NCBI RefSeq assembly: GCF_044704955.1
Contig: NC_092006.1
Coordinates: forward strand, 5,022,001 to 5,086,000
Source of the DNA: Pristiophorus japonicus
Taxonomy: Eukaryota
Direction of reading: 5' to 3'
DNA length: 64,000 nt
The position numbers were made by a program, and so were the translations under genes. How positions within the stretch are numbered: the stretch's first letter is position 1; each line of letters starts with the position of its first letter. Positions 38,708-64,000 of this stretch are shown in pieces. Below the pieces are notes generated by a model. The model searched no databases. It had not been told where the DNA came from and saw only the letters and a list, made by a program, of their open reading frames with translations.

Positions 38708-41700
38708 CTGTGAGAGAAAACAGAAACAATTACCACGGCCCACATCTTCAGCGTCGGAACAGTGGGACAGGAGAGGGCCATTCAGCCCTTCGAGCCTGTT
38801 CCCCCATTCAGTTTGATCATGGCTAATGTGTATCTGAACTCCATCCGCCCGCCTTAAATACCCTCGCCCAACACCAATCTTTCATCGCAGTTTTGAACAT
38901 TTCAATTGACCCTCAGCCTCAACAACTTTATGAGGGAGAGAGTTCCAGGTTCCCGCGGCCCTTTGTCTGAAGATGTGTTTCCTGACATCACCCCTGAACG
39001 GCCGGGCTCGAATTTTAAGGTCAAGCCCCCTTGTTCTGGACTCCCCAGACTCTCTCAAATTCTCTAATCATCTTAAATATCTCGATTACATCACCCTGTA
39101 ATCTACACTCGAGGGAAAACAAGGCCAGTCTAAGAACATAAGAACATAAGATTTAGGAGCAGGAGTCAGCCATTCGGGCCCCTCGAGCCTGCTCCGCCAT
39201 TCAATGAGATCACGGCTAACCTTCGACCTCAACTCCACTTTCCTGCCCCATCTCCATATCCCTTGTTCCCCTCGATTCCGAAAATCTCTCGATCTCAGCC
39301 TTGAATATACTCAACGACTGAGTCTCCACAGCCCTCTGGGGCAGAGAATTCCAAAGATTCACCACCCTCTGAGTGAAGAAATTCCTCCTCATCTCAGTCC
39401 TAAATGGCCGAGCCCTTATCCTGAGACTGTGTGACCCCTGGTTCTAGACTCCCCAGCCCTGATATGATTCAATGAGATCACATCTCATTCTTCTAAACTC
39501 CAGAGAGTATAGGCCCAGTCTACTCAACAGGTATAAGCAACCTGTCCCATAATATAACCCTTTTAGCATGTTGGGACATTTTATTGGTTGTTGATAGCTC
39601 AGGTATAATTGTAGTGAATCGGCAATCCTGTGGGTATTTATAATTACTGACTGAAAATATCCAAATATAGATATTTGAATTTACTTTCAAATAAAAGGTG
39701 AATTTGTTTATTCGTTCCTGGGATGTGGGCGTGGCTGGCAAGGCCGGCATTTATTGCCCATCCCTAATTGCCCCTTGAGAAGGTGGTGGTGAGCCGCCTT
39801 CTTGAACCACAGAGGGTGGTTAAGCACCATTCAAATCGCTGTGGGTTTGGAGTCACGTATCAGCCAGACTGGGTAAGGGGCAGTAGATTTCTGTGATTTC
39901 CTTCCCTGAAACATAGAAACATAGAAACATAGAAAATAGGTGCAGGAGTAGGCCATTCGGCCCTTCGAGCCTGCACCACCATTCAACATGATCATGGCTG
40001 ATCATGCAACTTCTGTACCCCTTTCCTGCTTTTTCTCCATACCCCTTGATCCCTTTAGCCATAAGGGCCACATCTAACTCCCTTTTGAATATATCCAACG
40101 AACTGGCCTCAACATCTTTCTGTGGTGGAGAATTCCACAGGTTCACAATTCTCTGAGTGAAGAAGTTTCTCCTCATCTCGGTCCTAAATGGCTTACCCCT
40201 TATCCTTAGACTGTGACCCCTTGTTCTGGACTTCCCCAACATTGGGAACATTCTTCCTGCATCTAGCCTGTCCAATCCCGTCAGAATTTTATATGTTTCG
40301 ATGAGATTCCCCTCTCATTCTTCTAAATTCCACTGAATATAAGCCTAGTCGATCCAGTCTTTCTTCATATGTCAGTCCTGCCATCCCGGGAATCAGTCTG
40401 GTGAACCTTCGCTGCACTCCCTCAATAGCAAGAATGTCCTTCCTCAGATTAGGAGACCAAAACTGCACACAATACTCCAGGTGTGGCCTCACTGAGGCGC
40501 TGTAGGAGGGCGATGGCTACGAAGCCAGGTCGCTGGTTGCAGTGCGGGCAGGCACAGCAGGAGGGGCGACGGAGCAGCAAGAGTCCGTAGAGGGAAGTGA
40601 TCGAGGCCCAAGAGAGGCGTGAATCTGGGGCCCAGAAGAGACGAGGGCCCAGCCCACACTGTGCGATATGTGCGCGCACTGGGCCCGTGCAGCAGAGCTG
40701 GTCTCCAGTCGTCCTGGTTCACCCTTGCCCCTGGACCAAGACCTCGCTCTGTCAAGCCCATGTGGTGGCTGGTGTGCAACGGTCACCCCACGTTAAAAAA
40801 ACCCACCCACAGGGGCCTTCCACCCTTCAGGATGTAGTTCGGGATCTAGAATTTTAGGTTCTTTATTGAAACACTGTGAACTCATCCCTTTTTTGGCGTG
40901 GAATCAAGCCATACTCACTTCGAGGGACTGCCTATAATGATGATACAACTGCAGTAAGACCTCCCTGTTCCTATACTCAAATCCCCTATACTGTCCTATA
41001 CTCAAAGACATTAGTGACACCAGATGGGGTTTTACAATCTGGTAATTTTATGGTCACCGTTACTTTTTAATTCCACATTTATTTGATTAATTGAATTTAA
41101 ACTTCTCACCTACCATGGTGGGATTGGAATTCGGGTCCCCGGGATTAATAGTCCAGGCGCCTGGATTACTAGCCCGCTGACATAACCACTATGCTACCGT
41201 TCTGTCGTGTTAAGCGAAGACAGCTCTTTTCCTATCTACCGCCTGGAACAGCGAACCACCCTGCAAGCGGATAAATTGGGAGTGCGGAGGAGTTTGAAGC
41301 ACCTTGCGACCATCCCTACCTGACTGCCGCTCCGGACAGCCGCCACAGACACCATCAGGAGCAGGAGAAGCGCCGCCAACAAATTCAGGACCAACCGCAA
41401 TCCGCAGGCGCTCTGTGACGGAGACACTGCAAGAAAAGAGCTTTTTTAAAGAAAAAGGACGTTTCTGCAAAGAGTTAAACAAGTGCAGCCACCGAGCAAA
41501 TCTGCTTGTGGAATTTCACACAAAACATTTTGCATAGTTCCCCAGCGAGCAGATATCTGAGAGGCCCCTGCTTACCGATAACTTTGCAATTAACAAGGAC
41601 TGCGATGTTGCGATAGACAGGCAGACACGGGCAGACACCTGAGAGATAGACAGATAAGAACACAAGAAATAGGAGCAGGAGTCGGCCATTTGGCTCCACA

Positions 41701-44700
41701 GCTGGTCTGGTCTCGGGCTCAGCTCTACTTCCCTGTCTGATAGATAGACAGACAGACATAGAGATAGAGATAGAGAGAGAGTTAGAGAGTTAGAGAGAGA
41801 GAGAGGGAGATAGAGAGAGAGAGAGAGAGAGAGGGAGATAGATAGATAGAGAGTTAGAGAGAGAGAGATAGATAGATAGAGAGTTAGAGATAGAGAGTTA
41901 GAGTTAGAGATAGAGAGTTAGAGATAGAGATAGAGAGTTAGAGATAGAGATAGAGAGTTAGAGATAGAGAGTTAGAGATAGAGAGTTAGAGAGATAGATA
42001 GATAGAGTTAGAGATAGAGAGTTAGAGATAGAGAGTTAGAGATAGAGAGTTAGAGAGATAGATCGATTGGATAGGCTGGGTTGTTTTCTTTGGAACAGAG
42101 GAGACTGAGGGGCGACCTTATTGAGGTGTATAAAATTATGAGGGGCCTGGATAGAGTGGATAGGACAGACCTGTTTCCCTTGGCAGAGGGGTCAACAACC
42201 AGGGGTCACAGATTGAAAGTAATTGGGAGGAGGTTTAGAGGGGATTTGAGGGGAAATGTCTTCACCCAGAGGGTGGCGGGGGTCTGGGGTGGAACTCACT
42301 GCCTGAAAGGGTGGTAGAGGCAGAAACCCTCACCACATTTAAAAAGCACCTGGATGTGCGCTTGAAGTTCCGTAACCTACAGGGCTACGGACTGAGAGCT
42401 GGAAAGTGGGATTAGGCTGGGTGGCTCTTTGTCGGCCAGTGCGGACACGATGGGCCGAATGACCTCCTTCCATGCTGTAAATTTCTATGATTCTAGGATA
42501 GACATCGCGATAGAACACAGCACAGTGGAAATGTAATCACATTTTCGACTTTTAAGCAGGGAGGTACCTTACTCCGAACATTTATTCCCTAGCTAGACAG
42601 ATAGACTTCAAAATTCAGCAAGGTAGACACTGAAACATTGAGAGATATGTGATAGGGAGATCATGGTATAATTATACACGGAGACGCAGAAAAGGACGTA
42701 AGAATATAAGAACATAAGAAATAGGAGCAGGAGTCGGCCATTCGGCCCCTCGAGCCTGCTCCGCCATTCAATACGATCCTGGCTGATCCGATCATGGACT
42801 CAGCTCCACTTCCCCGCCCACTCCCCATAACCCTTCACTTCCTTATCGCTCAAAAATCTGTCTATCTCCACCTTATATATATTCAATGTCCCAGCCTCCA
42901 CAGCTCTCTGGAGCCGAGAATTCCACAGATTTACAACCCTCTGAGAGAAGAAATTCCTCCTCATCTCAGTTTTAAATGGGCGGCCCCTTATTCTGAGACT
43001 ATGCCCCCTAGTTCTAGTCTCCCTCATCAGTGGAAACATCCTCTCTGCATCCACCTTGTCGAGCCCCCTCATTATCTTATACGTTTCGATAAGATCACCT
43101 CTCATTCTTCTGAACTCCAATGAGTAGAGACCCAACCTGCTCAACCTTACCTAAGAAGTCAACCCCCTCATCTCCGAAATCAACCAAGTGAACCTTCTCT
43201 GAACTGCCTCCAGTGCAAGTATATCCTTCCTTAAATACGGAGACCAAAACTGCACGCAGTACTCCAGGTGTGGCCTCACCAATACCCTCTCCAGTTGTAG
43301 CAGGACTTCTCTGCTTTTATACTCTATCCCCCTTGCAATAAAGGCCAAGATTCCATTCCAGTTGAGGTCTAAGATTGGCCGTGATCTTATTGAATGGCAG
43401 AGCAGGCTCGAGGGGCCGAATGGCCTCCTCCTGCTCCTAATTCGTATATTCTAAAATAGAGGTTAGACTGAACAGTAACCGACATATCGTAGAGGGTTGT
43501 TGAGGCCAGTCTGTTAGATATATTAAAGAGGAAGCTAGATATGGCCCTTACAGCTAAAGGGATCAAGGGGTATGGAGAGAAAGCAGGAATGGGGTACTGA
43601 GGTGAATGATCAGCCATGATCATATTGAATGGTGGTGCAGGCTCGAAGGGCCGAATGGCCTACTCCTGCACATATTTTCTATGTTTCTATGTAAGGACAG
43701 TGGCTAAATACAGCGCTATGTATTCTGAATTCCCTGTCATTCTTCTGAACTCCAGTCCTTCAATATACAAAAAGTTGCGAAGAAGTGAGACTCACATCAC
43801 CATTGAAGATATTAGTGAAGGGGACACCGGCCACAGTTACCTCCCGGAGATGCGACGCTTTCACTCAGGAGATCCCCGGTGGCGTTGATCGGAACGGTGC
43901 AAGTGCAGACGGCGCCGCTGCGCCAGGTTTCGGCCGAGACGCTCAGGACGCTTCTGGCGGTATAGCTCCCGTCCGGCTCCAGCCTGCCGGGCTCGCTCCG
44001 TCCCTCGGCGGCCCGTCCCGCAACCAGCCAGCGGATGGGGAAGGAGTCCGGAGCAGCGCCCCGCACCAGACACATCAAGGACACTCTCTCCAGCCGGGGA
44101 ATCTCAGCCGGCGGTGGCGTTAAGAGGAAGAGGACCGGGGGGCCCGCTAGATGGAAGAGAAATTGGAATTAACCAGGCGCACAAGGTAGGTTTAAATTGG
44201 TGTCTCGACGCACAATTGGATGGACGAGTGGGATTACCTGTGATCACCAGCGTGGTGCCAGTCCCGAATATCAGGGACCGATTCCTGGCGTTTGGAGCAG
44301 CGCAGTAATACCGCCCAGAATCGCTCCTCTGGACGTTGTCAATGACCAGCGAATGATTCCCTGATTGCTCGCATACCTCGCCGGAAAATCTTCCCCCGGG
44401 CCTCACGAACCGTCCGGTTTTGTAAACAATCCGCATGCCCTCTCGGTGCCAGTGTGTGTACCAGTAAACGATGCCCGGGGCCAGCCTCCCGGTCTGGCAT
44501 TGAAGTTTGACCAGGCTCCCGACATCGGCCGTTAGCAGCGCCGGAAATTGGCTCAAGACCGCCTGAGACACGACAGCTGAGACAAGGTTGCGGGGGGGGG
44601 GGGGGACACAAAAATTAAAAAAAACACAATATTAACAACAGGTTATAGGCCCCCGAGTCACCCTGGATACCGACACATCTCAAATTCCCCTCCACTGGCG

Positions 44701-47700
44701 CGTCGGGAGCGCGTGTGGGACATTCCGCCGCGCTGCGCACCGTTAAATTGCGCCTCTCCGCCCGCAATTCCCACAGGCGCACAGTCCGAGTCCGTTCGCT
44801 GTGAAATCCGCTCCAATCATTGGCGAGCACCATGGCGACTGACTGCAGTTAAGATTGCAAAATCCTTCTCCCAAACCGATTATGCTTCCCCCTGGTCTAA
44901 CCCGGCTCTCCAATCCATCTCTCCAGGGGTTGGGGACCGGGGGGCGCTTGATTGTGTTAAAATGGGGCGATAGCTTTCTCACTAATTCCACTAGACAGGC
45001 CCCCTCTCCCAACGGTAGACCCTCGCCTTCAAATACCGGAGTTCACTGACAACTTTATCTCAGTTAGGGGGCAGTTCAGTGTCACATTCGCTTCCACTCA
45101 CCCATCACAATGTTCGGCTCCAAAGTCGCGCTATCGGTATTGAGCGAAGCCCGCACACCTTTATACTTTGCCCAATATCTAATCTGCTTCTTAAAAAAAT
45201 TATAGTTAAACGCAAACTTGTGTATCAGCGAACGATGCAACACAGGAGGCCATTCGGCCCATCAAACCTGTGTTGTGCCGGCTCTGTGACAGAGCGACTC
45301 AATCATTCCCACTCCGCCCCTGCTCTTTCCCCACAGCCCGGCATATTGCCTCCTTTCCAAATATTTATCCAATTCCCCCGTTTGAAAGTCACTTTTTCAT
45401 CTGCTCCCAGTGCCCCTTTCAGGCAGCGCGTTCCCGAGCACAAGCTCTCAGGGCTTGAAATCACGTCCTGATCTCCCCCTCTGGTTCTGTTACCGATTAT
45501 CTTAAACATGTGTCCTCTGCTTACCCACCCTCCTCCCACTGGAAACAATCTCTCCTTCTTTACTCGATCGGAAACCTTCTCCTTATTAATTCTATACAAA
45601 ACCCTTCTCCTTATTAATTCTCTCCAAAACCCTTCTCCTTATTAATTCTCTCCAAAACCCGTCTAAAATCCAAAATCCAAAAGAGCAGGAGTAAACGGGT
45701 ACTTTTCAGAATGGCAGGCAGTGACTAGTGGAGTGCCGCAAGGTTCTGTGCTGGGGCCCCAGCTGTTTACATTGTACATTAATGATTTAGACGAGGGGAT
45801 TAAATGCAGTATCTCCAAATTTGCGGATGATACTAAGTTGGGTGGCAGTGTGAGCTGCGAGGAGGATGCTATTAGGCTGCAGAGTGACTTGGATAGGTTA
45901 GGTGAGTGGGCAAATGCATGGCAGATGAAGTATAATGTGGATAAATGTGAGGTTATCCACTTTGGTGGTAAAAACAGAGAGACAGACTATTATCTGAATG
46001 GTGACAGATTAGGAAAAGGGAAGGTGCAACGAGACCTGGGTGTCATGGTACATCAGTCATTGAAGGTTGGCATGCAGGTACAGCAGGCGGTTAAGAAAGC
46101 AAATGGCATGTTGGCCTTCATAGCGAGGGGATTTGAATACAGGGGCAGGGAGGTGTTGCTACAGTTGTACAGGGCCTTGGTGAGGCCACACCTGGAGTAT
46201 TGTGTACAGTTTTGGTCTCCTAACTTGAGGAAGGACATTCTTGCTATTGAGGGAGTGCAGCGAAGGTTCACCAGACTGATTCCCGGGATGGCGGGACTGA
46301 CCTATCAAGAAAGATTGGATCAACTGGGCTTGTATTCACTGGAGTTCAGAAGAATGAGAGGGGACCTCATAGAAACGTTTAAAATTCTGACGGGTTTAGA
46401 CAGGTTAGATGCAGAAAGAATGTTCCCAATGTTGGGGGAGTCCAGAACCAGGGGTCACAGTCTGAGGATAAGGGGTAAGCCATTTAGGACCGAGATGAGG
46501 AGAAACTTCTTCACCCAGAGAGTGGTGAACCTGTGGAATTCTCTACCACAGAAAGTAGTTGAGGCCAATTCACTAAATATATTCAAAAGGGAGTTAGATG
46601 AAGTCCTTACTACTCGGGGGATCAAGGGTTATGGCGAGAAAGCAGGAAGGGGGTACTGAAGTTTCATGTTCAGCCATGAACTCATTGAATGGCGGTGCAG
46701 GCTAGAAGGGCTGAATGGCCTGCTCCTGCACCTATTTTCTATGTTTCTATGTTTCTATGTCTCCTTATTAATTCTCTCCAAAACCCTTCTCCTTATTAAT
46801 TCGCTCCAAAACCCTTCTCCTTATTAATTCGCTCCAAAACCCTTCTCCTTATTAATTCTCTACAAAATCCTTCCCCTTATTAATTCGCTCCAAAACCCTT
46901 CTCCTTATTAATTCGCTCCAAAACCCTTCTCCTTATTAATTCGCTCCAAAACCCTTCTCCTTATTAATTCTCTACAAAATCCTTCCCCTTATTAATTCGC
47001 TCCAAAACCCTTCTCCTTATTAATTCTAACCAAAACCCTTCTCCTTATTAATTCGCTCCAAAACCCTTCTCCTTATTAATTCTAACCAAAACCCTTCTCC
47101 TTATTAATTATCTCCAAAATCGTTCTCCTTATTAATTCGCTCCAAAACCCTTCTCCTTATTAATTCTAACCAAAACCCTTCTCCTTATTAATTCTCTCCA
47201 AAACCCTTCTCCTTATTAATTCTATCCAAAACCCTTCTCATTATTAATTCACTCCAAAACCCTTCTCCTTATTAATTCTCTCCAAAATCCTTCTCATTAT
47301 TAATTCTCTCCAAAACCCTTCTCATTATTAATTCTCTCCAAAACCCTTCTCCTTATTAATTCTATCCAAAATCCTCCTCCTTATTAATTCTCTCCAAAAC
47401 CCTCCTCCTTATTAATTCTCTCCAAAACCCTTCTCCTTATTATTCTATCCAAAACCCTTCTCCTTATTAATTCTATCCAAAACCCTCCTCCTTATTAATT
47501 CTCTCCAAAACCCTTCTCCTTATTAATTCTCTCCAAGACCCTTCTCCTTATTAATTCTCTCCAAGACCCTTCTCCTTATTAATTCTCTCCAAAACCCTTC
47601 TCCTTATTAATTCTCTCCAAAACCCTTCTCCTTATTAATTCTATCCAAAACCCTTCTCCTTATTAATTCTCTCCAAAACCCTTCTCCTTATTAATTCTCT

Positions 47701-48796
47701 CCAAAACCCTTCTCATTATTAATTCTCTCCAAAACCCTTCTCCTTATTAATTCTCTCCAAAACCCTTCTCCTTATTAATTCGATCCAAAACCCTCCTCCT
47801 TATTAATTCTCTCCAAAACCCTTCTCCTTATTAATTCTCTCCAAGACCCTTCTCCTTATTAATTCTCTCCAAGACCCTTCTCCTTATTAATTCTCTCCAA
47901 AACCCTTCTCCTCATTAATTCTCTCCAAAACCCTTCTCCTTATTAATTCCATCCAAAACCCTTGTCCTTATTAATTCTCTCCAAAATCCTCCTCCTTATT
48001 AATTCTCTCCAAAACCCTTCTCATTATTAATTCTCTCCAAAACCCTTCTCCTTATTAATTCTCTCCAAAACCCTTATCCTTATTAATTCTATCCAAAATC
48101 CTCCTCCTTATTAATTCTCTCCAAAACCCTCCTCCTTATTAATTCTCTCCAAAACCCTTCTCCTTATTAATTCTCTCCAAAACCCTTCTCCTTATTAATT
48201 CTATCCAAAACCCTTCTCCTTATTAATTCTATTCAAAACCCTCCTCCTTATTAATTCTCTCCAAAACCCTTCTCCTTATTAATTCTCTCCAAGACCCTTC
48301 TCCTTATTAATTCTCTCCAAGACCCTTCTCCTTATTAATTCTCTCCAAAACCCTTCTCCTTATTAATTCTATCCAAAACCCTTCTCCTTATTAATTCTCT
48401 CCAAAACCCTTCTCCTTATTAATTCTATCCAAAAACCTTCCCATTATTAATTCTCTCCAAAACCCTTCTCCTGATTAATTGTATCCAAAACCCTTCTCCT
48501 TATTAATTCTATCCAAAACCCTTCTCCTTATTAATTCTATCCAAAACCCTTCTCCTTATTAATTCTCTCCAAAACCCTTCTCCTTATTAATTCTCTCCAA
48601 AACCCTTTTCCTTATTAATTCTCTCAAAAACCCTTCTCCTTATTAATTCTCTCCAAAACCCTTTTCCTTATTAATTCGCTCCAAAATCCTTCCCTTGGTT
48701 GACTCTCTCCTAACCCCTTCCTCACTCTGGCAAAACATCGAAGGCTATCTCACCTTGGAAGAGATGGAACAGCACACAGAGACCACAGAAGCTCAT
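38456..48796 (-). CDS. Gene C: non-rearranging VJ-C1-TM receptor, exons 48796-48754, 44576-44238, 44146-43841, 41426-41320, 38707-38456 (about 348 aa if the TM exon splices directly to the last exon)
   Basis: Leader [14 protein letters not shown]; V ends [24 protein letters not shown]; C1 ..GAVCTC; TM exon [36 protein letters not shown] ends in phase 0; last exon [12 protein letters not shown].. starts in phase 0. The 3' structure is less certain. Confidence 0.75.
39908..40492 (-). mobile_element. CR1-clade LINE fragment
   Basis: ORFs 39853-40275 and 40289-40492. Confidence 0.9.
41320..41426 (-). CDS. Gene C stalk and TM exon (107 nt)
   Basis: tttcttgcag|TG, TCAG|gtaggg; aligns to the gene B TM exon with a 10-nt deletion. 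Confidence 0.8.
41740..42065 (+). repeat. GA/GATA/GAGTTA compound microsatellite
   Basis: Direct; positionally equivalent to the GATA tract in gene B. Confidence 0.9.
42066..43690. mobile_element. CR1 fragments in the gene C C1-TM intron
   Basis: CR1 peptides on both strands. Confidence 0.85.
43841..44146 (-). CDS. Gene C C1-set exon (306 nt)
   Basis: ccatctag|CG, GGAG|gtaact; [37 protein letters not shown]. Confidence 0.9.
44238..44576 (-). CDS. Gene C germline-joined VJ exon (339 nt)
   Basis: gtctcag|CT, ACAG|gtaatc; [35 protein letters not shown]. Confidence 0.92.
45685..46759 (+). mobile_element. Young CR1-clade LINE, 5'-truncated, uninterrupted 312-aa RT ORF (45721-46659), inserted in the 28-bp array
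   Basis: [22 protein letters not shown] motifs; no stops; absent from the gene D arm. Confidence 0.95.
46760..48695 (-). repeat. Same 28-bp minisatellite, inverted, about 69 copies, in gene C intron 1 (about 3 more units at 45573-45660)
   Basis: (CTCTCCAAAACCCTTCTCCTTATTAATT)n is the reverse complement of the 55910-60858 unit. Confidence 0.97.
48754..48796 (-). CDS. Gene C leader exon
   Basis: 43 nt, CAAG|gtgaga; inverted twin at 55803-55845. Confidence 0.75.
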
Positions 48797-50962: not shown

Positions 50963-51189
50963 ATTTATGAGTGACTGTCTTATATCGATGGCCCCCTCGT
51001 TCTGGTCTTCTCCCTCAAGTTGGAAGCATCTCTATTGTGAGGCAGAAGTGGATATGATCCATTCAGACTTCCCTATAACGGTGGTGAGCACATATTTGAG
51101 GTATGGAGAACCCAGATGCAATGAAAATGGGTTAAGAATGTAAAAAAACACAAGATAAGGCCCGAGGACTGTGCAAGAAACAGACCTGG

Positions 51190-53970: not shown

Positions 53971-54812
53971 TAGCCCCTGCATAATGTATCTGTTTAAGTC
54001 TCAAATGAGGTACTGTATACTGGGATTACTCCAACCCCGGTAGATTTCTCTATTTGAACTAACCGGAACTACGCGTGAGTTGGATAAAATTTACCAAAGA
54101 TATTTGATAGCATTCCATTGCTACCACAAGTCACACACCACCTCGGGATTTCCGGATCTGCTTTACAGCCAACGGAGCAACATTTTCAAGTGTGGTCACT
54201 GGTGCAATGTCGGGACACGCGGCCAATTTCCGCACAGCAAGCTCCCACAAACTCACGCTTACCAAAAGAAAATCACTAAACTGGCTGTAAAGCGCGTTGG
54301 GACGTCCTGATGTCGTGAAAGGCACTATATAAATTCCCTAAATTAAGAAGTGTGGGTTATAGACAGGCCCCAGTCTCTAGAACTTGTCGGTCCCTGTTTA
54401 CCGATTACACCTAGTTCGAACAGAAATGCACACAGTAAAGTTAGTTATTTATTCTCAATATTGTTTCCGATCCTCCTTTTCTAAGAGGAGCCAATTCTAG
54501 TTCTCGGGTCTGTTTCTTGCACAGTCCTCGGGCCTTATCTTGTGTGTTTTTACATTCTTAACACGTCTACATTACATCTGACTTCTCCATACCTCAAATA
54601 TGTGCTCACCCCCCACCCCGTTATAGAGAAGGCTGTATGGATCCTATCCACTACCGTCTCACAATAGAGATGTTTCCACTTGTGGGAGAGCCTAGATCTA
54701 GGGGGCCATCACTATACGACAGTCACCCATAAATCCAATGGGGAATTCAGGAGAAACTTCATCACCCAGAAAATGGGGAGAATGTGGAACTCGCTGCCAA
54801 AGGGAGGGGTTG

Positions 54813-55185
54813 AAACATAGAATCATAGAAAATAGGTGCAGGAACAGGCCATTCGGCCCTTTGAACCTGCACCACCATTCAATATGATCATGGCTGATCA
54901 TGCAACTTCAGTACCCCATTCCTGCTTTCTCTCCATACCCCCTTGATCCCTTCAGCCGTAAGGACCACATCTAACTCCCTTTTGAATATATCCAACGAAC
55001 TGGCCTCAACAACTCTCTGCAGGAGAGACTTCCACAGGTTCACAATTCTCTGAGTGAAGATGTTTCTCCTCATCTCGGTCCTAGATGGCTTACCCCTTAT
55101 CCTGAGAGTGTGACCCCTGGTTCTGGACTTCCCCAACATCGGGAACATTCTTCCTGCATCTACCCGGTCCAATCCCGGCAGAATC
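54813..55185 (-). mobile_element. CR1 3' fragment
   Basis: ORF 54888-55208. Confidence 0.85.
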
Positions 55186-55559
55186 TGAGGCGAATAGTAT
55201 CGATGCATTTAAGGGGAGGCTGGATCAACACATGAGGGAGAAAGGAATAGAAGGATATGGGGATGGGGTGAGATGGAGAGTGGTGGGAGGGGCTGGTGTG
55301 GAGCATAAACCCCTCATGGAGCGGTGGGGCTGAATGATCTGTTTCTGTGATGTACATTCTCTCTAATTTTCGAGAGAAAAGTGCCCCAGTCTGTTGAGCC
55401 TTTCCTGATCAGTGTAACCTCTCTCAATTCTGGTGTCATCTTTCTGAATCTTGTTTACACCCGCTCCAGTGTCTCTATATTCTTTTGAAAGATGGAGACC
55501 AGAACCGTGCGCAGTGCTCCAAGTGTGGTCAAACTAACATGCGTAGAGACGAGGTGCCT

Positions 55560-55802
55560 TCTGTAACACAGATGGTGTGTGTGTGTTTTATCTCTTTACC
55601 TGTAAAAACAGGAAACCCACACAGAGCTTTCTGCCTTGGCACTATTTTGCAGCCCAAATCGTACATTTATTAATAAACACAGTGCGTGCTTACCACAATT
55701 GGCTCGGCATTTCACACCAGCCTCGCACAGACCTGCTGACAACCATTCCTCCCTGAGCTGACAGTCTCAGCATCAGAGTTCAACCCTCCTGGGGCAGTGA
55801 TA
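55560..55802 (+). promoter_or_regulatory. Gene D proximal promoter (ETS ACAGGAAA, RUNX ACCACA, E-box CAGATG); mirror copy for gene C at 48797-49040
   Basis: Motifs seen 100-240 bp upstream of the leader ATG; short motifs, so function is inferred. Confidence 0.4.
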
Positions 55803-55845
55803 ATGAGCTTCTGTGGCCTCTGTGTGCTGTTCTATCTCTTCCAAG
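55803..55845 (+). CDS. Gene D leader exon
   Basis: 43 nt, CAAG|gtgaga, phase 1. Confidence 0.75.
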
Positions 55846-58800
55846 GTGAGATAGCCTTCGATGTTTTGCCAGAGTGGGGAAGGGATTAGGAGAGAGTAAA
55901 CCAAGGGAAGGGTTTTGGAGCGAATTAATAAGGAAAAGGGTTTTGGAGAGAATTAATAAGGAGAAGGGTTTTGGAGAGAATTAAAAAGGAGAAGGGTTTT
56001 GGAGGGAATTAATAAGGAGAAGGGTTTTGGATAGAATTAATGAGGAGAAGGGTTTTGGAGAGAATTAATAAGGAGAAGGGTTTTGGAGAGAATTAATAAG
56101 GAGAAGGGTTTTGGATACAATTAATCAGGAGAAGGGTTTTGGATAGATTTAATAATGAGAAGGGTTTTGGATAGAATTAATAAGGAGAAGGGTTTTGGAG
56201 AGAATTAATAAGGAGAAGGGTTTTGGATAGAATTAATGAGGAGAAGGGTTTTGGAGAGAATTAATAAGGAGAAGGGTTTTGGATACAATTAATCAGGAGA
56301 AGGGTTTTGGATAGATTTAATAATGAGAAGGGTTTTGGATAGAATTAATAAGGAGAAGGGTTTTGGATAGAATTAATAAGGAGAAGAGTTTGGATAGATT
56401 TAAAAATGAGAAAGGTTTTGGATAGAATTAATAAGGAGAAGGGTATTGGAGAGAATTAATAAGGAGAAGGGTTTTGGATACAATTAATAAGGAGAAGGGT
56501 TTTGGATACAATTAATAAGGAGAAGGGTTTTGGATAGAATTAATAAGGAGAAGAGTTTGGATAGATTTAATAATGAGAAAGGTTTTGGATAGAATTAATA
56601 AGGAGAAGGGTTTTGGATACAATTAATAAGGAGAAGGGTTTTGGATAGATTTAATAATGAGAAGGGTTTTGGATAGAATTAATAAGGAGAAGGGTTTTGG
56701 AGAGAATTAATAAGGAGAAGGGTTTTGGAGATAATTAATAAGGAGAAGGGTTTTGAATAGATTTAATAATGAGAAGGGTTTTGGATAGAATTAATAAGGA
56801 GAAGGGTTTTGGATAGAATTAATAAGGAGAAGGATTTTGGACAGAATTAATAAGGAGAAGGGTTTTGGATAGAATTAATATGGAGAAGGTTTTGGAGAGA
56901 ATTAATAAGGAGAAGGGTTTTGGAGAGAATTAATAAGGGGAAGGTTTTGGAGAGAGTTAATAAGGAGGAGGGTTTTGGAAAGCATTAATAAGGAGAAGGG
57001 TTTTGGAGAGAATTAATAAGGAGACGGGTTTTGCATAGATTTAATAAGGAGAAGGGTTTTGTAGAGAATTAATAAGGAGAAGGGTTTGGAGAGAATTAAT
57101 AAGGACAAGGGTTTGCATAGATTTAATAATGAGAAGGGTTTTGGATAGATTTAATAATGAGAAGGGTTTTGGATAGAATTAATAATGAGAAGGGTTTTGG
57201 AGAGAATTAATAAGGAGAAGGGTTTTGGAGAGAATTAATAAGGAGAAGGGTTTTGGATAGAATTAATAATGAGAAGGGTTTTGGATAGAATTAATAATGA
57301 GAAGGTGTTTTGGATAGAATTAATAATGAGAACGGTTTTGGATAGAATTAATAAGGAGAAGGGTTTTGGAAAGAATTAATAAGGAGAAGGGTTTTGGAGA
57401 GAATTAATAAGGAGAAGGGTTTTGGATAGAATTAATAATGAGAAGGGTTTTGGATAGAATTAATAAGGAGAAGGGTTTTGGAAAGAATTAATAAGGAGAA
57501 GGGTTTTGGAGAGAATTAATAAGGAGAAGGGTTTTGGATAGATTTAATAAGGAGAAGGGTTTTGGATAGATTTAATAAGGAGAAGGATTTTGGATAGAAT
57601 TAATAATGAAAAGGGTTTTGGATAGAATTAATAAGGAGAAGGGTTTTGGAAAGAATTAATAAGGAGAAGGGTTTTGGAGAGAATTAATAAGGAGAAGGGT
57701 TTTGGATAGAATTAATAAGGGGAAGGTTTTGGAGAGAGTTAATAAGGAGGAGGGTTTTGGAAAGCATTAATAAGGAGAAGGGTTTTGGAGAGAATTAATA
57801 AGGAGACGGGTTTTGCATAGATTTAATAAGGAGAAGGGTTTTGAAGAGAATTAATAAGGAGCAGGGTTTGGAGAGAATTAATAAGGAGAAGGGTTTGGAT
57901 AGATTTAATAATGAGAAGGGTTTTGGATAGATTTAATAATGAGAAGGGTTTTGGATAGAATTAATAATGAGAAGGGTTTTGGAGAGAATTAATAAGGAGA
58001 AGGGTTTTGGAGAGAATTAATAAGGAGAAGGGTTTTGGATAGAATTAATAATGAGAAGGGTTTTGGATAGAATTAATAATGAGAAGGTGTTTTGGATAGA
58101 ATTAATAATGAGAACGGTTTTGGATAGAATTAATAAGGAGAAGGGTTTTGGAAAGAATTAATAAGGAGAAGGGTTTTGGAGAGAATTAATAAGGAGAAGG
58201 GTTTTGGATAGAATTAATAATGAGAAGGGTTTTGGATAGAATTAATAAGGAGAAGGGTTTTGGAAAGAATTAATAAGGAGAAGGGTTTTGGAGAGAATTA
58301 ATAAGGAGAAGGGTTTTGGATAGATTTAATAAGGAGAAGGGTTTTGGATAGATTTAATAAGGAGAAGGGTTTTGGATAGAATTAATAATGAGAAGGGTTT
58401 TGGATAGAATTAATAAGGAGAAGGGTTTTGGAGAGAATTAATAAGGAGAAGGGTTTTGAATAGATTTAATAATGAGAAGGGTTTTGGATAGAATTAATAA
58501 GGAGAAGGGTATTGGAGAGAATTAATAAGGAGAAGGGTTTTGGATACAATTAATAAGGAGAAGGGTTTTGGATACAATTAATAAGGGGAAGGGTTTTGGA
58601 TAGAATTAATAAGGAGAAGAGTTTGGATAGATTTAATAATGAGAAAGGTTTTGGATAGAATTAATAAGGAGAAGGGTTTTGGTTACAATTAATAAGGAGA
58701 AGGGTTTTGGATAGATTTAATAATGAGAAGGGTTTTGGATAGAATTAATAAGGAGAAGGGTTTTGGAGAGAATTAATAAGGAGAAGGGTTTTGGAGATAA

Positions 58801-61800
58801 TTAATAAGGAGAAGGGTTTTGAATAGATTTAATAATGAGAAGGGTTTTGGATAGAATTAATAAGGAGAAGGGTTTTGGATAGAATTAATAAGGAGAAGGA
58901 TTTTGGACAGAATTAATAAGGAGAAGGGTTTTGGATAGAATTAATATGGAGAAGGTTTTGGAGAGAATTAATAAGGAGAAGGGTTTTGGAGAGAATTAAT
59001 AAGGGGAAGGTTTTGGAGAGAGTTAATAAGGAGGAGGGTTTTGGAAAGCATTAATAAGGAGAAGGGTTTTGGAGAGAATTAATAAGGAGACGGGTTTTGC
59101 ATAGATTTAATAAGGAGAAGGGTTTTGTAGAGAATTAATAAGGAGAAGGGTTTGGAGAGAATTAATAAGGACAAGGGTTTGCATAGATTTAATAATGAGA
59201 AGGGTTTTGGATAGATTTAATAATGAGAAGGGTTTTGGATAGAATTAATAATGAGAAGGGTTTTGGAGAGAATTAATAAGGAGAAGGGTTTTGGAGAGAA
59301 TTAATAAGGAGAAGGGTTTTGGATAGAATTAATAATGAGAAGGGTTTTGGATAGAAGTAATAATGAGAAGGTGTTTTGGATAGAATTAATAATGAGAACG
59401 GTTTTGGATAGAATTAATAAGGAGAAGGGTTTTGGAAAGAATTAATAAGGAGAAGGGTTTTGGAGAGAATTAATAAGGAGAAGGGTTTTGGATAGAATTA
59501 ATAATGAGAAGGGTTTTGGATAGAATTAATAAGGAGAAGGGTTTTGGAAAGAATTAATAAGGAGAAGGGTTTTGGAGAGAATTAATAAGGAGAAGGGTTT
59601 TGGATAGATTTAATAAGGAGAAGGGTTTTGGATAGATTTAATAAGGAGAAGGATTTTGGATAGAATTAATAATGAAAAGGGTTTTGGATAGAATTAATAA
59701 GGAGAAGGGTTTTGTAAAGAATTAATAAGGAGAAGGGTTTTGGAGAGAATTAATAAGGAGAAGGGTTTTGGATAGAATTAATAAGGGGAAGGTTTTGGAG
59801 AGAGTTAATAAGGAGGAGGGTTTTGGAAAGCATTAATAAGGAGAAGGGTTTTGGAGAGAATTAATAGGAGACGGGTTTTGCATAGATTTAATAAGGAGAA
59901 GGGTTTTGAAGAGAATTAATCAGGAGAAGGGTTTTGGATAGAATTAATAATGAGAAGGGTTTTGGAGAGAATTAATAAGGAGAAGGGTTTTGGAGAGAAT
60001 TAATAAGGAGAAGGGTTTTGGATAGAATTAATAATGAGAAGGGTTTTGGATAGAATTAATAATGAGAAGGTGTTTTGGATAGAATTAATAATGAGAACGG
60101 TTTTGGATAGAATTAATAAGGAGAAGGGTTTTGGAAAGAATTAATAAGGAGAAGGGTTTTGGAGAGAATTAATAAGGAGAAGGGTTTTGGATAGAATTAA
60201 TAATGAGAAGGGTTTTGGATAGAATTAATAAGGAGAAGGGTTTTGGAAAGAATTAATAAGGAGAAGGGTTTTGGAGAGAATTAATAAGGAGAAGGGTTTT
60301 GGATAGATTTAATAAGGAGAAGGGTTTTGGATAGATTTAATAAGGAGAAGGGTTTTGTATAGAATTAATAATGAGAAGGGTTTTGGATAGAATTAACAAG
60401 GAGAAGGGTTTTGGAAAGAATTAATAAGGAGAAGGGTTTTGGAGAGAATTAATAAGGAGAAGGGTTTTGGATAGAATTAATAATGAGAAGGGTTTTGGAT
60501 AGAATTAATAATGAGAAGGAGTTTTGGATAGAATTAATAAGGAGATGGGTTTTGGAGAGAATTAATAAGGAGAAGGGTTTTGGAGAGAATTAATAAGGAG
60601 AAGCGTTTTGGAGAGAATTAATAAGGAGAAGGGTTTTGGAGAGAATTAATAAGGAGAAGCGTTTTGGAGAGAATTAATAAGGAGACGGGTTTTGGAGAGA
60701 ATTAATAAGGAGACGGGTTTTGGAGAGAATTAATAAGGAGAAGGGTTTTGGAGAGAATTAATAAGGAGACGGGTTTTGGAGAGAATTAATAAGGAGACGA
60801 GTTTTGGAGAGAATTAATAAGGAGAAGGGTTTTGGAGAGAATTAATAAGGAGAAGGTTTCCGATCGAGTAAAGAAGGAGAGATTGTTTCCAGTGGGAGGA
60901 GGGTGTGGGTAAGCAGAGGACACATGTTTGAGATAATCGGTAACAGAACCAGAGGTGGAGTTCAGGACGTGTTTTCAAGCCCTGGGAGCTTGTGCTCGGG
61001 AACGCGCTGCCTGAAAGGGGCACTGGGAGCAGATGAAAAAGTGACTTTCAAACGGGGGAATTGGATAAATATTTGGAAAGAGGCAATATGCCGGGCTGTG
61101 GGGAAAGAGCAGGGGCGGAGTGGGAATGATTGAGTCGCTCTGTCACAGAGCCGGCACAACACAGGTTTGATGGGCCGAATGGCCTCCTGTGTTGCATCGT
61201 TCGATGATGCACAAGTTTGCGTTTAACTATAATTTTTTTAAGAAGCAGATTAGATATTGGGCAAAGTATAAAGGTGTGCGGGCTTCGCTCAATACCGATA
61301 GCGCGACTTTGGAGCCGAACATTGTGATGGGTGAGTGGAAGCGAATGTGACACTGAACTGCCCCCTAACTGAGATAAAGATGTCAGTGAACTCCGGTATT
61401 TGAAGGCGAGGGTCTGCCGTTGGGAGAGGGGGGCCTGTCTAGTGGAATTAGTGAGAAAGCTATCGCCCCATTTTAACACAATCAAGCGCCCCCCCCGGTC
61501 CCCAACCCCTGGAGAGATGGACTGGAGAGCCGGGTTAGACCAGGGGGAAGCATAATCGGTTTGGGAGAAGGCTTTTGCAATCTTAACTGCAGCCAGTCGC
61601 CATGGTGCTCGCCAATGATTGGAGCGGATTTCACAGCGAACTGACTCGGACTGTGCGCCTGTGGTAATTGCGGGCGGAGAGGCGCAATTTAACGGTGCGC
61701 AGCGCGGCGGAATTTCCCACACGCGCTCCCGACGCGCCAGTGGAGGGGAATTTGAGATGTGTCGGTATCCAGGGTGACTCGGGGGCCTATAACCTGTTGT

Positions 61801-63947
61801 TAATATTGTGTTTTTTTAATTTTTGTGTCCCCCCCCCCCCCGCAACCTTGTCTCAGCTGTCGTGTCTCAGGCGGTCTTGAGCCAATTTCCGGCGCTGCTA
61901 ACGGCCGATGTCGGGAGCCTGGTCAAACTGCAATGCCAGTCCGGGAGGCTGGCCCCGGGCATCGTTTACTGGTACACACACTGGCCCCGAGAGGGCATGC
62001 GGCTCGTTTACAAAACCGGACGGTTCGTGACGCCCGGGGGAAGATTTTCCGGCGAGGTATGCGAGCAATCGGGGAATCATTCGCTGGTCATTGACAACGT
62101 CCAGAGGAACGATTCTGGGCGGTATTACTGCGCTGCTCCAAACGCCGGGAATCGGTCCCTGATATTCGGGACTGGCACCACGCTGGTGATCACAGGTAAT
62201 CCCACACGCCCATCCAATTGTGCGTCGAGACACCAATTCAAACCTGCCTTGTGCGCCTGGTTAATTCCAATTTCCCTTCCATCTAGCGGGCCCCCCGGTC
62301 CTCTTCCTCTTAACGCCGCCGCCGGCTGAGATTCCCCGGCTGGAGAGGGTGCCCTTGATGTGTCTGGTGCGGGGCGCTGCTCCCGACTCCTCCCCCATCC
62401 GCTGGCTGGTTGCGGGACGGGCCGCCGAGGGACGGAGCGAGCCCGGGATGCTGGAGCCGGACGGGAGCTATACCGCCAGAAGCGTCCTGAGCGTCTCGGC
62501 CGAAACCTGGCGCAGCGGCGCCGTCTGCACTTGCACCGTTCCGATCAACGCCACCGGGGATCTCCTGAGTGAAAGCGTCGCATCTCCGGGAGGTAACTGG
62601 AGCTACTGGCGGTTTGCCAAATAGTTAGTGATAATAATGTTCATTATAGTATTGCTGGGATGTGAGGGTTTTTTTTGCACGAGAGATTGTGTAGAATGGG
62701 CCTATGTTCTCTGGAGTTTCGTATAAGATTATGAGGGGGCTTGACAAGCTGGATGCAGAGAGGATGTTTCCACTGATGGGGGAGTCTAGAACTAGAGGGC
62801 ATAATCTCAGAATAAGGGGCCGCCCATTTAAAACTGAGATGAGGAGGAATTTCTTCTCTGAGGGTTGTAAATCTGTGGAATTCGCTGCCTCAGAGAGCTG
62901 TGGAAGCCGGGACATTGAGTAAATTTACGATAGAAATAGACAGTTTCTTAACTGATAAGTAATTAAGGGGTTATGGGGAGCGGGCAGGGAAGTGGAGCTG
63001 AGTCCATGATCGGATCAGCCATGATCGTATTGAATGGCGGAGCAGGCTCGAGGGGCCGAATGGCCGACTCCTGCTCCTATTTCTTATGTTCTTATGGAGT
63101 TTCGAAGAAGGAGAGGTGATCTCATTGAAACGTACAAGACTCTGAGGGGGATTGACAGGGTGGATGCAGGGAGGGTGTTTCCCCCCGGGGCTGGGGAGTC
63201 TAGAACCAGGGGTCACACAGTCTCAGGGTAAGGGGTTGGCCATTTAAGACTAAGATGGGGAGAACGTTCTTCACTTGCGATTTACTACGTTACAGGCGCT
63301 ATATAAATATAAGTTGTTGTATATTGGGAGCACTAGTATGGAAAAGTAGTATTTTATAAATGACATGAGTTTGGAAAACAGCGAGACAGAGAGAGACCAT
63401 ATACACAAACCTGTAAATGTGGGAAGGGCAGGTTGGCGAGCTGGTTAAACTGGCTTACGGGGTACTTGAATTTATATAAGGAGATATTAGAACAGTTGAC
63501 CAAAAGCTTGGTCAAAGAGGGAGGTTTTACAGAAGGAGGAGAGGCGGAGAGGTTTAGGGAGAGAGTTCCAGAGCTTGGGGCCCCAGGCAGCTGAAGGCAC
63601 GGCCACCAATGGTGGAGCGATAGAAATCGGGGGGAATGCTCAAGAGGCCAGGATTGGAAGAGCGCAGAGATCACAGCCACTTACGTTGAGACAGTTCATA
63701 GTTCGTCACCATGTCTTTGATGATTCGGGCCAAAAACCAGCTTCAAACCCTCAGCGGACGAGGTTTCAGAATTTGACTGAATTATTTTGTGTTTCGCTCA
63801 TTTCACAAGAGTTGTCTTTCTGCCGTTCAGAGCCCCTTCACAGCTCGACCTGCCGCTTCGCGCTTTATGCCAGCCTGGCGATGGCTCCTCTTGTGATGGG
63901 GTTGATCGGTGTCGCGGTGGCACGGCGTGGCAAGACTCGCCAACCAG
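55803..63947 (+). CDS. Gene D (3'-partial): non-rearranging VJ-C1-TM receptor, exons 55803-55845, 61857-62195, 62287-62592, 63831-63947; cytoplasmic exons presumably beyond the window
   Basis: Leader [14 protein letters not shown]; V and C1 about 97% identical to gene C; 117-nt phase 1-1 TM exon EPLHSSTCRFALYASLAMAPLVMGLIGVAVARRGKTRQP with donor CCAG|gtactg. Confidence 0.82.
55910..60858 (+). repeat. 28-bp minisatellite (AATTAATAAGGAGAAGGGTTTTGGAGAG)n, about 175 copies, in gene D intron 1
   Basis: Direct periodicity; variant units recur at 2066-bp spacing. Confidence 0.97.
61857..62195 (+). CDS. Gene D germline-joined VJ exon (339 nt)
   Basis: V-set motifs plus [24 protein letters not shown]; canonical splice sites. 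Confidence 0.92.
62287..62592 (+). CDS. Gene D C1-set exon (306 nt)
   Basis: C1-set motifs with GAVCTC; canonical splice sites. Confidence 0.9.
62720..63272 (+). mobile_element. CR1 3' fragments in the gene D C1-TM intron
   Basis: ORFs 62704-62922 and 63034-63231. Confidence 0.85.
63831..63947 (+). CDS. Gene D stalk and TM exon (117 nt)
   Basis: tgccgttcag|AG acceptor; Cys at codon 8 and TRQ motif at the end as in gene B; same exon length as gene B. Confidence 0.78.
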
Positions 63948-64000
63948 GTACTGCCCGTCTGAGCCAAACCCTCAATTTCGCCTTTAGCTGAACCTCTCCC

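What the first reader, a model, noticed from the sequence alone, without database searches (positions are those of the whole stretch)
41320..63947. Paired-receptor signature: genes C and D share a near-identical ectodomain but have different TM exons
Seen: V exons differ at 9/339 nt (6 aa) and C1 exons at 7/306 nt (3 aa). Identity stops about 7 bp after the C1 donor (C: gtaactgtggccgg; D: gtaactggagctac). The TM exons are highly divergent: [26 protein letters not shown] versus D CRFALYASLAMAPLVMGLIGVAVARR. Downstream of C1, gene C resembles gene B instead. Known: paired immune receptors (KIR, Ly49, SIGLEC5/14, PILR) keep the same ligand-binding part with different signalling ends, often through gene conversion. 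Inference: C (TLYAQL tail) and D may deliver different signals on the same ligand.
Basis: partly seen in the sequence, partly recalled or inferred. Interest (0 to 1): 0.82.

Follow-up and report, generated by a model that had tools for sequence, protein, structure and literature searches.

The report
Head-to-head shark receptor genes, shared front half
Two neighbouring sawshark immune-receptor genes share a nearly identical front half and have different membrane anchors, but both appear to end in the same tyrosine signalling motif, so this looks like ordinary gene-family reshuffling, not an on/off receptor pair.

Summary
Genes C (- strand) and D (+ strand) differ at 9/339 nt (6 aa) in the V exon and 7/306 nt (3 aa) in the C1 exon. 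Alignable sequence ends 7 bp after the C1 donor. The TM exons are only 47% identical.

The shared block is not limited to exons. It is the outer part of a large inverted repeat (43834-49414 against 62599-55186). This repeat also holds the 5' flank, the leader exon and intron 1 with a 28-bp minisatellite. Non-exon sequence is as similar as exon sequence (p = 0.62). Identity falls towards the centre: 97, 96, 88, 85, 75%.

Both genes belong to an elasmobranch-wide, unnamed family of non-rearranging VJ-C1-TM receptors with an invariant C-terminal YAxL motif.

- **Gene D:** it has the canonical 117-nt TM exon. Its protein is identical to two Pristiophorus japonicus proteins that end in ...EEETMYAHLAFAVD, the same motif class as C's TLYAQLAF.
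- **Gene C:** it is the derived copy. Its TM exon is B-like and has a 10-bp deletion. I found no 59-nt middle exon, but the reading frame stays open.

An inhibitory/activating pair is therefore not supported. The scan has noted this family and this inverted repeat before.

The parts
43834..49414 (-). C-side arm of the inverted repeat: 5' flank, leader exon, intron 1, V exon, intron 2, C1 exon and 7 bp of intron 3 of gene C
   Evidence: blastn: 45664-43834 against 60767-62599 is 97.4% over 1836 bp. 48702-49414 against 55897-55186 is 95.7%.
55186..62599 (+). D-side arm of the inverted repeat. Same content for gene D, with a longer minisatellite.
49412..54813 (.). Centre of the palindrome. It holds decayed inverted homology (88%, 85%, 75.5%) interrupted by SINE and LINE insertions.
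   Evidence: 49412-49495/54813-54729 at 88%; 50963-51192/54734-54501 at 84.7%; 51544-51684/54500-54367 at 75.5%
48754..48796 (-). Gene C leader exon, [14 protein letters not shown], donor G|gtgaga
   Evidence: tblastn with P0001; sequence read
46760..48720 (-). 28-bp minisatellite in C intron 1, 70 copies
   Evidence: TRF
45666..46757 (+). Retroelement fragment (330-aa RT-like ORF plus SINE-like repeat) in C intron 1, absent from D
   Evidence: ORF list; repeat matches. The C/D alignment breaks at 45665.
44238..44576 (-). Gene C V exon (germline-joined [12 protein letters not shown]), 339 nt
   Evidence: Pfam V-set match obtained for the D copy
43841..44146 (-). Gene C C1 exon, 306 nt
   Evidence: Pfam C1-set
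41320..41426 (-). Gene C TM exon, 107 nt. B-like, with a 10-bp deletion relative to B and D. It ends in phase 0.
38456..38707 (-). Gene C tail exon, starting [14 protein letters not shown]. The ORF runs 83 codons to a stop at 38456.
55803..55845 (+). Gene D leader exon, [14 protein letters not shown]
55903..60856 (+). 28-bp minisatellite in D intron 1, 177 copies. Unit AAGGAGAAGGGTTTTGGATAGAATTAAT; the consensus unit has no C on the sense strand.
   Evidence: TRF; GC skew 0.95
61857..62195 (+). Gene D V exon, 339 nt
62287..62592 (+). Gene D C1 exon, 306 nt
63831..63947 (+). Gene D TM exon, 117 nt, phase-1 end. Canonical for the family and protein-identical to P0001/P0151. The rest of the gene lies beyond the window.
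30516..30632 (-). Gene B TM exon (117 nt), used as comparator
29082..29140 (-). Gene B middle cytoplasmic exon (59 nt, [21 protein letters not shown]). No counterpart was found in C.
26896..26973 (-). Gene B tail exon, [25 protein letters not shown]

Best explanation
C and D are two head-to-head members of a multigene family of non-rearranging VJ-C1-TM receptors. The family is found across sharks and rays.

The two genes sit on the arms of an old inverted repeat. The gene-bearing part of the arms runs from the 5' flank through the leader, intron 1, V and C1. It has been homogenised recently, most likely by gene conversion between the inverted arms. The tract ends where homology ends, 7 bp into intron 3.

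The 3' halves come from different family lineages.
- D keeps the canonical 117-nt TM exon. By inference from protein-identical relatives, it also keeps a middle exon and a ...TMYAHLAF tail.
- C has a B-type 3' half that has been altered. A 10-bp deletion in the TM exon and loss of the 59-nt middle exon together remove 69 nt. The TM exon can therefore still splice in frame to the TLYAQLAF tail exon.

Both genes thus encode inhibitory-type (ITIM/ITSM-like YAxL) chains with the same V-C1 ectodomain and a stalk cysteine. They are not an inhibitory/activating pair.

Shown: the anatomy, the identities, the reading frames and the family membership. Inferred: conversion as the mechanism, D's tail, and whether C is used.
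For: - Counts and borders were checked.
- The block is 97.4% identical over 1836 bp and includes 1.1 kb of non-coding DNA.
- Substitution density does not differ between exons and non-exons: 16/645 against 24/1179, Fisher p = 0.62. dN/dS is 0.69 for V and 0.27 for C1.
- The leader exons lie 4.2 and 6.0 kb upstream, on the far side of the minisatellite, inside the same repeat.
- Identity falls towards the centre: 97.4, 95.7, 88, 85, 75.5%.
- TM exon identity is B-C 70%, C-D 47% and B-D 48%. C lacks 10 bp just before the shared CGGCAGTCAG|gt.
- B has a clear middle exon. C has none above noise.
- The C model gives an open 348-aa frame with canonical splice sites.
- P0001 and P0151 (P. japonicus) have D's TM exon 39/39 aa and end in TMYAHLAFAVD.
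- The family alignment has an invariant stalk Cys and an invariant Y-A-x-L. Members are found in 14 other elasmobranch species beside P. japonicus.
- A Pristis member (P0176) also joins TM directly to the tail motif.
- C carries most of the C/D differences when compared with three other D-like sequences.
Against: - D's middle and tail exons lie beyond base 64000 and were not read. P0001 and P0151 are not D itself; P0001, the closer one, differs from D at 4 aa in V-C1 and 1 in the leader, and P0151 differs at more.
- A conversion tract of 5.6-7.4 kb that ends in a 72%-identical exon is unusual. A one-step rearrangement at the shared GGTAACT donor could give the same picture.
- No RNA contig covers C's TM exon in the one run available, so C may be silent.
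- C's TM segment has Arg and Asn near its outer end (LRLVLN), which D and B lack. Some signalling difference therefore cannot be excluded.
Confidence: 0.62

Rival explanations
1. C and D are a true functional paired receptor. The same ectodomain is kept alike so both bind one ligand, and they signal differently. D would be the canonical inhibitory chain. C would be a derived chain whose outer-TM Arg/Asn and very short juxtamembrane segment change adaptor use or trafficking. That would make C a 'bifunctional' form like CHIR-AB.
For: - The ectodomains are near-identical, with an abrupt switch at the C1/intron 3 border.
- C has R and N in LRLVLNLL where B has W and T. C's YAQL lies only about 8 residues after the TM segment.
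- C's frame is preserved by two changes that add up to 69 nt.
- The cluster does hold an Arg-TM, Tyr-free member, gene A.
- Classes with a charged TM plus an ITIM exist in birds (abstract of PMC3601082).
Against: - Both tails carry the family YAxL motif.
- C's Arg is 3 residues after the stalk Cys. That is the membrane edge, not the mid-TM position seen in gene A, where it is 9 residues after the Cys.
- Identity is no higher in exons than in introns.
- At least three further D-like V-C1 sequences exist, so C/D is not a unique pair.
- No transcript of C was seen.
Confidence: 0.12
2. C is a one-step chimera and probably a decaying by-product. A D-like 5' half was joined to a B-like 3' half by a single rearrangement at the conserved GGTAACT splice-donor microhomology (non-homologous or template-switch repair). 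There was no ongoing conversion, and the pair has no joint function.
For: - B, C and D all share GGTAACT at the junction. About 10 nt of unassignable sequence lie between the end of D-homology and the start of B-homology.
- C has a 10-bp deletion, no middle exon and a tail ORF that runs on past the point where canonical tails stop, as B's does more briefly.
- C carries 7 amino-acid changes not seen in four other D-like sequences.
- Contig cover on C's TM exon is zero.
Against: - The identity gradient towards the palindrome centre suggests older homology followed by later homogenisation, not one event.
- All C splice sites and the 348-aa frame are intact.
- The combined dN/dS of 0.46 suggests some constraint.
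Confidence: 0.2
3. Assembly artefact: one arm is a mis-joined haplotype or a collapsed paralogue, so the head-to-head pair does not exist as drawn.
For: - The subfamily has several 97-99% identical copies.
- Each arm holds kilobases of 28-bp minisatellite, which is hard to assemble.
Against: - The arms differ by 2-5%, by a 1.1-kb retroelement insertion, and by 70 against 177 satellite copies.
- They have unrelated 3' continuations.
- Identity decays smoothly into the centre.

None of this looks like two alleles.
Confidence: 0.05

Closest known systems
Unnamed elasmobranch VJ-C1-TM-YAxL receptor family (database models labelled 'immunoglobulin kappa light chain-like', 'Ig heavy chain Mem5-like' or 'uncharacterized'; for example P0001 of Pristiophorus japonicus and P0152-P0156 of Heterodontus francisci)
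   Same: Same architecture and the same invariant residues: split leader, single-exon VJ with FGxG, one C1-set domain, stalk Cys, TM, and a C-terminal [ST]xYAxL. D is 97% identical to P0001 in V.
   Different: C has a shortened TM exon, lacks the middle cytoplasmic exon, and its tail ORF runs 69 residues past the point where canonical tails stop.
Paired receptors homogenised by gene conversion (SIGLEC11/16, KIR, PILR, SIRP alpha/beta, CEACAM1/3)
   Same: Adjacent genes with extremely similar ectodomain-coding regions and divergent TM/cytoplasmic parts. PMC5701461 attributes the SIGLEC11/16 similarity to gene conversion. PMC3533184 defines paired receptors by similar ligand-binding regions with opposite signalling (abstracts).
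   Different: Here both partners appear to carry the same tyrosine motif. No partner has a tyrosine-free tail with a mid-membrane charge. The similar tract is not exon-focused.
UrIg and UrIg2 (non-rearranging elasmobranch antigen-receptor genes; PMC12227049)
   Same: Non-split VJ exon with a split leader, followed by C1-type domains. The C/D C1 domain matches the UrIg2 structure 9dmx_A, residues 242-330, at E = 2.7e-19.
   Different: UrIg has three C domains and is secreted. UrIg2 has 9-11 C domains plus a TM. C and D have a single C1 exon and a tyrosine-motif tail.
PRARP genes (Fu et al. 2019, J Immunol; cited in PMC10751288; details from my own memory because the paper is not held)
   Same: As I recall, a pair of non-rearranging VJ(-C1) membrane genes with an ITIM-like tail that form disulfide-linked dimers. 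The architecture is the same as here.
   Different: No PRARP sequence was available, so homology was not tested. PRARP was described in bony vertebrates.
Bifunctional receptors with a charged TM plus an ITIM (chicken CHIR-AB; PMC3601082, PMC6760009)
   Same: Gene C combines an Arg near the outer end of the TM segment with a YAxL tail.
   Different: C's Arg sits at the membrane edge. Adaptor binding is untested. The Ig domains are of a different type (V + C1, not C2-like).

Membership tests
Paired activating/inhibitory immune receptors | Closely linked genes with near-identical ectodomains | tested here: met
   C and D are head-to-head with about 7 kb between their leader exons. V is 97.3% and C1 97.7% identical.
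Paired activating/inhibitory immune receptors | One partner has an ITIM-type tail and the other lacks it (opposite signalling) | tested here: not met
   C has TLYAQLAF. D's tail is off the window, but proteins with an identical TM exon end in TMYAHLAFAVD. YAxL is invariant in the family. The evidence for D is indirect.
Paired activating/inhibitory immune receptors | A charged residue inside the TM helix of the ITIM-less partner, for an ITAM adaptor | tested here: inconclusive
   C has Arg 3 residues after the stalk Cys, and D has Arg 1 residue after it. Both are at the membrane edge. Gene A has a mid-TM Arg in FAIRVSAIL.
Paired activating/inhibitory immune receptors | Similarity confined to or focused on the ligand-binding exons (conversion under selection) | tested here: not met
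   The tract runs from the 5' flank to intron 3 +7. Exon and non-exon divergence are equal (p = 0.62).
Paired activating/inhibitory immune receptors | Same ligand with opposite cellular outcome | not testable with these tools
   Needs binding and signalling assays.
Elasmobranch VJ-C1-TM-YAxL family | Single-exon V domain with a J motif (FGxGxxL) and no split for rearrangement | tested here: met
   [10 protein letters not shown] lies inside the 339-nt V exon in both genes. Pfam V-set.
Elasmobranch VJ-C1-TM-YAxL family | One C1-set domain, then a stalk Cys and a TM segment | tested here: met
   Pfam C1-set, E = 1.2e-9. The Cys lies in SACGL (C) and STCRF (D), at the invariant alignment column C237.
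Elasmobranch VJ-C1-TM-YAxL family | Canonical 3' exon set: 117-nt TM exon (phase-1 end), about 59-nt middle exon, and a tail exon starting at the YAxL motif | tested here: inconclusive
   In D the TM exon is canonical and the rest is off the window. In C the TM exon is 107 nt, no middle exon was found, and the tail exon is present. B has all three.
UrIg / UrIg2 | VJ followed by three or more C1-type domains | tested here: not met
   There is only one C1 exon between V and TM in C and D. UrIg architecture is from PMC12227049.
PRARP | Sequence homology to the chicken/teleost PRARP V and C1 domains | not tested
   No PRARP sequence or paper was available. Only the recalled architecture matches.
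SIRP | V domain followed by two C1 domains; alpha/beta forms with ITIMs or a TM Lys | tested here: not met
   There is one C1 domain only. The best solved-structure matches are Ig and TCR chains. No tree with SIRP sequences was made.

The most novel reading that the evidence does not exclude
C and D may be an early or atypical paired system. Arm-to-arm conversion in a palindrome would keep promoter, leader and ectodomain alike. D would signal through the canonical long tail. C would behave differently: it has been re-framed by a 10-bp deletion plus exon loss, has Arg/Asn at the outer TM and its tyrosine lies about 8 residues from the membrane. The difference could be in adaptor coupling, dimer partner or endocytosis. 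That would be a shark example of how bifunctional or activating partners arise from inhibitory ones.
Probability: 0.12. Interest if true: 0.6.

Novelty: new member of a known kind. Interest (0 to 1): 0.33.

Why it matters
Sharks are the oldest living lineage with antibody- and TCR-type domains. A germline-joined VJ-C1 receptor family there bears on how antigen receptors and their regulatory relatives evolved.

This locus gives a clean, dated-looking example of how such clusters are remodelled. It shows a palindrome with an identity gradient, homogenised 5' halves and swapped 3' halves. It also shows one copy re-framed by two compensating lesions.

It does not show that sharks have a matched inhibitory/activating pair on this ectodomain. 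The family itself is already predicted in public databases under misleading names, and this scan has met it before on other DNA of this genome.

Tried and rejected
- **The look-up of encoding contigs** was closed, so neither D's downstream DNA nor the P0001 locus could be fetched.
- **First leader search:** looking for a leader exon within 1.1 kb of V gave nothing credible. The real leader lies beyond the minisatellite.
- **First translation:** one search used the wrong phase. This was corrected.
- **Broad tblastn with family tails** was mostly noise. A restricted local alignment found B's middle exon but only a chance-level 'SGNTSSDK' in C. The forced alignment shows no conserved exon or donor there.
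- **RNA evidence:** only one public run held the sequence. Its contigs show a spliced V-C1 transcript of another, P0151-like paralogue and nothing on C's TM exon. This cannot prove C is silent.
- **Literature:** searches for a named family (PRARP, non-rearranging + ITIM + shark) found no held paper describing it.
- **The search of earlier findings** by sequence and by 'TMYAHLAF' returned nothing.
- **Rejected readings:** membership in UrIg/UrIg2 (wrong number of C domains), and C's Arg as the family's activating-type Arg (wrong position compared with gene A).
- **Joined models:** Exons were searched one by one, by reference. Exons were joined only inside local scripts, to check the reading frame.


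Full report
**What is in the window**

A tblastn with the V and C1 open frames finds four related genes:
- A on the + strand at 13.3-14.0 kb
- B on the - strand at 33.2-32.4 kb
- C on the - strand at 44.6-43.8 kb
- D on the + strand at 61.8-62.6 kb

Pfam calls the first domain V-set and the second C1-set. In C and D the V exon runs without interruption into a J-like [10 protein letters not shown], so the gene is germline-joined and does not rearrange.

The closest solved structures are real antibody and TCR chains. For the C1 domain they also include UrIg2.

The best database match is Pristiophorus japonicus, the Japanese sawshark.

**Check of the observation**

With phase-1 borders, the exons are as follows.

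| Exon | Gene C (-) | Gene D (+) | Length | Differences |
|---|---|---|---|---|
| V | 44576-44238 | 61857-62195 | 339 nt | 9 nt, 6 aa |
| C1 | 44146-43841 | 62287-62592 | 306 nt | 7 nt, 3 aa |

Both introns start gtaactg and cannot be aligned from the eighth base on.

The TM exons are 41426-41320 in C and 63831-63947 in D. They are 46.7% identical.

The identical block is not made of exons only. It runs for 1836 bp at 97.4% and includes 1.1 kb upstream of V.

A tblastn with the full-length relative P0001 places the leader exons far upstream. C's is at 48796-48754 and D's at 55803-55845. Each lies on the far side of a 28-bp minisatellite that fills intron 1, with 70 copies in C and 177 in D.

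The 5' flanks of the leaders are 95.7% alike. The inverted homology then continues towards the centre at 88%, 85% and 75.5%, broken by SINE and LINE insertions.

C and D therefore sit head-to-head on the arms of an old palindrome whose gene-bearing parts were homogenised recently.

Substitutions are no rarer in exons (16/645) than outside them (24/1179; p = 0.62). dN/dS is 0.69 for V and 0.27 for C1. The likeness belongs to the DNA segment as a whole. It is not a mark of selection on the binding domain.

**The family**

A HMMER scan of 1.84 billion representatives with the D V exon gave P0001 (299 aa, 97% identical) and a set of 250-410-aa single-V proteins.

Word-index searches with P0001 and with a 22-member alignment found about 30 members. 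They come from 14 other elasmobranch species beside P. japonicus, among them Heterodontus, Mustelus, Rhincodon, Scyliorhinus, Cetorhinus, Hemiscyllium, Stegostoma, Chiloscyllium, Pristis, Hypanus, Mobula and Leucoraja. Several species have more than one copy on a single contig. The database names are misleading, for example 'immunoglobulin kappa light chain-like' and 'Ig heavy chain Mem5-like'.

The alignment shows these invariant features:
- the usual V and C1 cysteines and tryptophans
- the FG of the J motif
- a stalk cysteine just before the membrane
- Y-A-x-L close to the C-terminus (consensus ETLYAxLAFxxDPxL)

This is an ITIM/ITSM-like motif. It also fits a YxxΦ sorting signal. I found no held paper that names this family. 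By architecture the closest described things are UrIg/UrIg2 and, from my memory only, the PRARP genes cited in PMC10751288.

**D is the canonical copy**

D's TM exon is 117 nt and ends in phase 1, like B's. Its 39 residues are identical to those of P0001 and P0151.

Those two proteins continue ESAATTDRGTASRIKKAEEE-TMYAHLAFAVD. TMYAHLAF is the same motif as the TLYAQLAF of B and C.

A first-stage note on the next window (s1-879231) also calls D's tail 'inhibitory-type'. I could not check that note.

This step is therefore an inference.

**C is the derived copy**

Downstream of C1, C follows B:
- a ~30-bp nearly identical core early in intron 3
- a TM exon 70% identical
- a tail exon 76% identical over its first 75 nt

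Compared with both B and D, C's TM exon lacks 10 bp just before the shared CGGCAGTCAG|gt. It is therefore 107 nt long and ends in phase 0.

B has a clear 59-nt middle exon encoding [21 protein letters not shown], which matches Heterodontus SGNMNSDDELMDSRPRAQEKE. C has nothing above noise in that interval.

Ten plus 59 is 69 nt, or 23 codons. The TM exon can therefore splice straight to the TLYAQL exon in frame.

The model leader-V-C1-TM-tail is an open 348-aa frame with canonical splice sites.

A Pristis member (P0176) also joins TM directly to the motif, so this layout has a precedent.

C's tyrosine would sit about 8 residues from the membrane. Its TM start reads LRLVLN where B has LWVLVT.

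The Arg lies 3 residues after the stalk Cys, at the membrane edge. In gene A, the Arg-TM member of this cluster, the Arg lies 9 residues after the Cys (FAIRVSAIL).

**Not a unique pair**

I compared five V-C1 sequences: C, D, P0001, P0151 and the one RNA contig available.
- Seven of the nine C/D amino-acid differences are private to C.
- Two of them (T28, H43) are shared in a mosaic pattern with P0151 and the RNA contig.

D thus belongs to a group of at least four near-identical sequences. P0001 and P0151 carry the canonical TM and tail, and the RNA contig's 3' part fits nothing in C's 3' region. C is the outlier.

**RNA evidence**

Only one public run held the sequence. Laid on 38650-44640, it gave a 1111-nt contig with V joined exactly to C1, with the intron 44147-44237 removed.

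That contig's 364 nt of 3' sequence fit nothing in C's 3' region. Contig cover on C's TM exon was zero.

By its variant letters, the transcript comes from a P0151-like paralogue. The subfamily is therefore transcribed and spliced as modelled. C itself is unconfirmed, and contigs cannot show absence.

**Mechanism and rivals**

I favour arm-to-arm gene conversion in an old palindrome, with the tract stopping where homology stops (confidence about 0.6).

A single rearrangement at the shared GGTAACT donor could also have made C a chimera that is now decaying (about 0.2). About 10 unassignable bases lie at that junction.

A true functional pair, with C as a CHIR-AB-like bifunctional variant, is possible but weakly supported (about 0.12).

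A mis-assembly is unlikely (about 0.05). The arms differ by 2-5%, by a 1.1-kb retroelement and by satellite length, and identity decays smoothly into the centre.

**Verdict**

This is a new local example of a known kind of event inside a gene family that databases already predict and that this scan has noted elsewhere in the same genome.

N runs were left as they are. Read laying was given 5991 letters.

Noticed in passing
window 46760-48720 and 55903-60856: Intron 1 of both C and D is filled by a 28-bp minisatellite (70 and 177 copies). Its consensus unit has no C on the sense strand (GC skew 0.95). This places a G-rich non-template-strand repeat just downstream of the promoter and leader. 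I did not examine whether it affects transcription, R-loops or recombination between the arms.
   Followed up: partly
window about 18700 (+ strand): Gene A's TM exon reads CTPILPFAIRVSAILVLVLILIILCHHNCGRRGE, with an Arg in mid-membrane. This is the activating-type layout that C and D lack, so A is the better candidate for an activating partner in this cluster.
   Followed up: partly
window 44666-44833 (-) and 61602-61769 (+): The database model P0151 starts with a 54-aa N-terminus translated from the open frame just upstream of the V exon. That looks like a mis-prediction. The real leader (as in P0001) lies 4-6 kb upstream, beyond the minisatellite.
   Followed up: partly
window 43841-44578, run X1: The only public run holding this sequence contains a spliced V-C1 transcript that matches neither C nor D. 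It is closest to P0151, differing from it at 3 aa. At least one more near-identical paralogue or allele is therefore expressed.
   Followed up: yes
window 45666-46757: A retroelement fragment with a 330-aa RT-like open frame plus a SINE-like repeat sits in C's intron 1. It is absent from the D arm, so it was inserted, or lost from D, after the arms were last homogenised there.
   Followed up: no
window 33344-33645: An N run lies just upstream of gene B's V exon, where a leader or intron 1 might be expected. B's leader was not found in the window. The Ns were left untouched.
   Followed up: no
window 6040-6850, 25210-25780, 53290-53790: Three arrays share a roughly 33-bp repeat that translates as ...SAALPQ.../...GAPHCRRG... 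in long open frames on both strands. It is probably a satellite and not coding sequence.
   Followed up: no
P0176 (Pristis pectinata), P0175 (Mustelus asterias): Family members in other species show tail variants. P0176 joins TM directly to the tyrosine motif, with no middle segment. P0175 isoform X2 ends without the motif. Tail plasticity therefore seems common in the family.
   Followed up: partly
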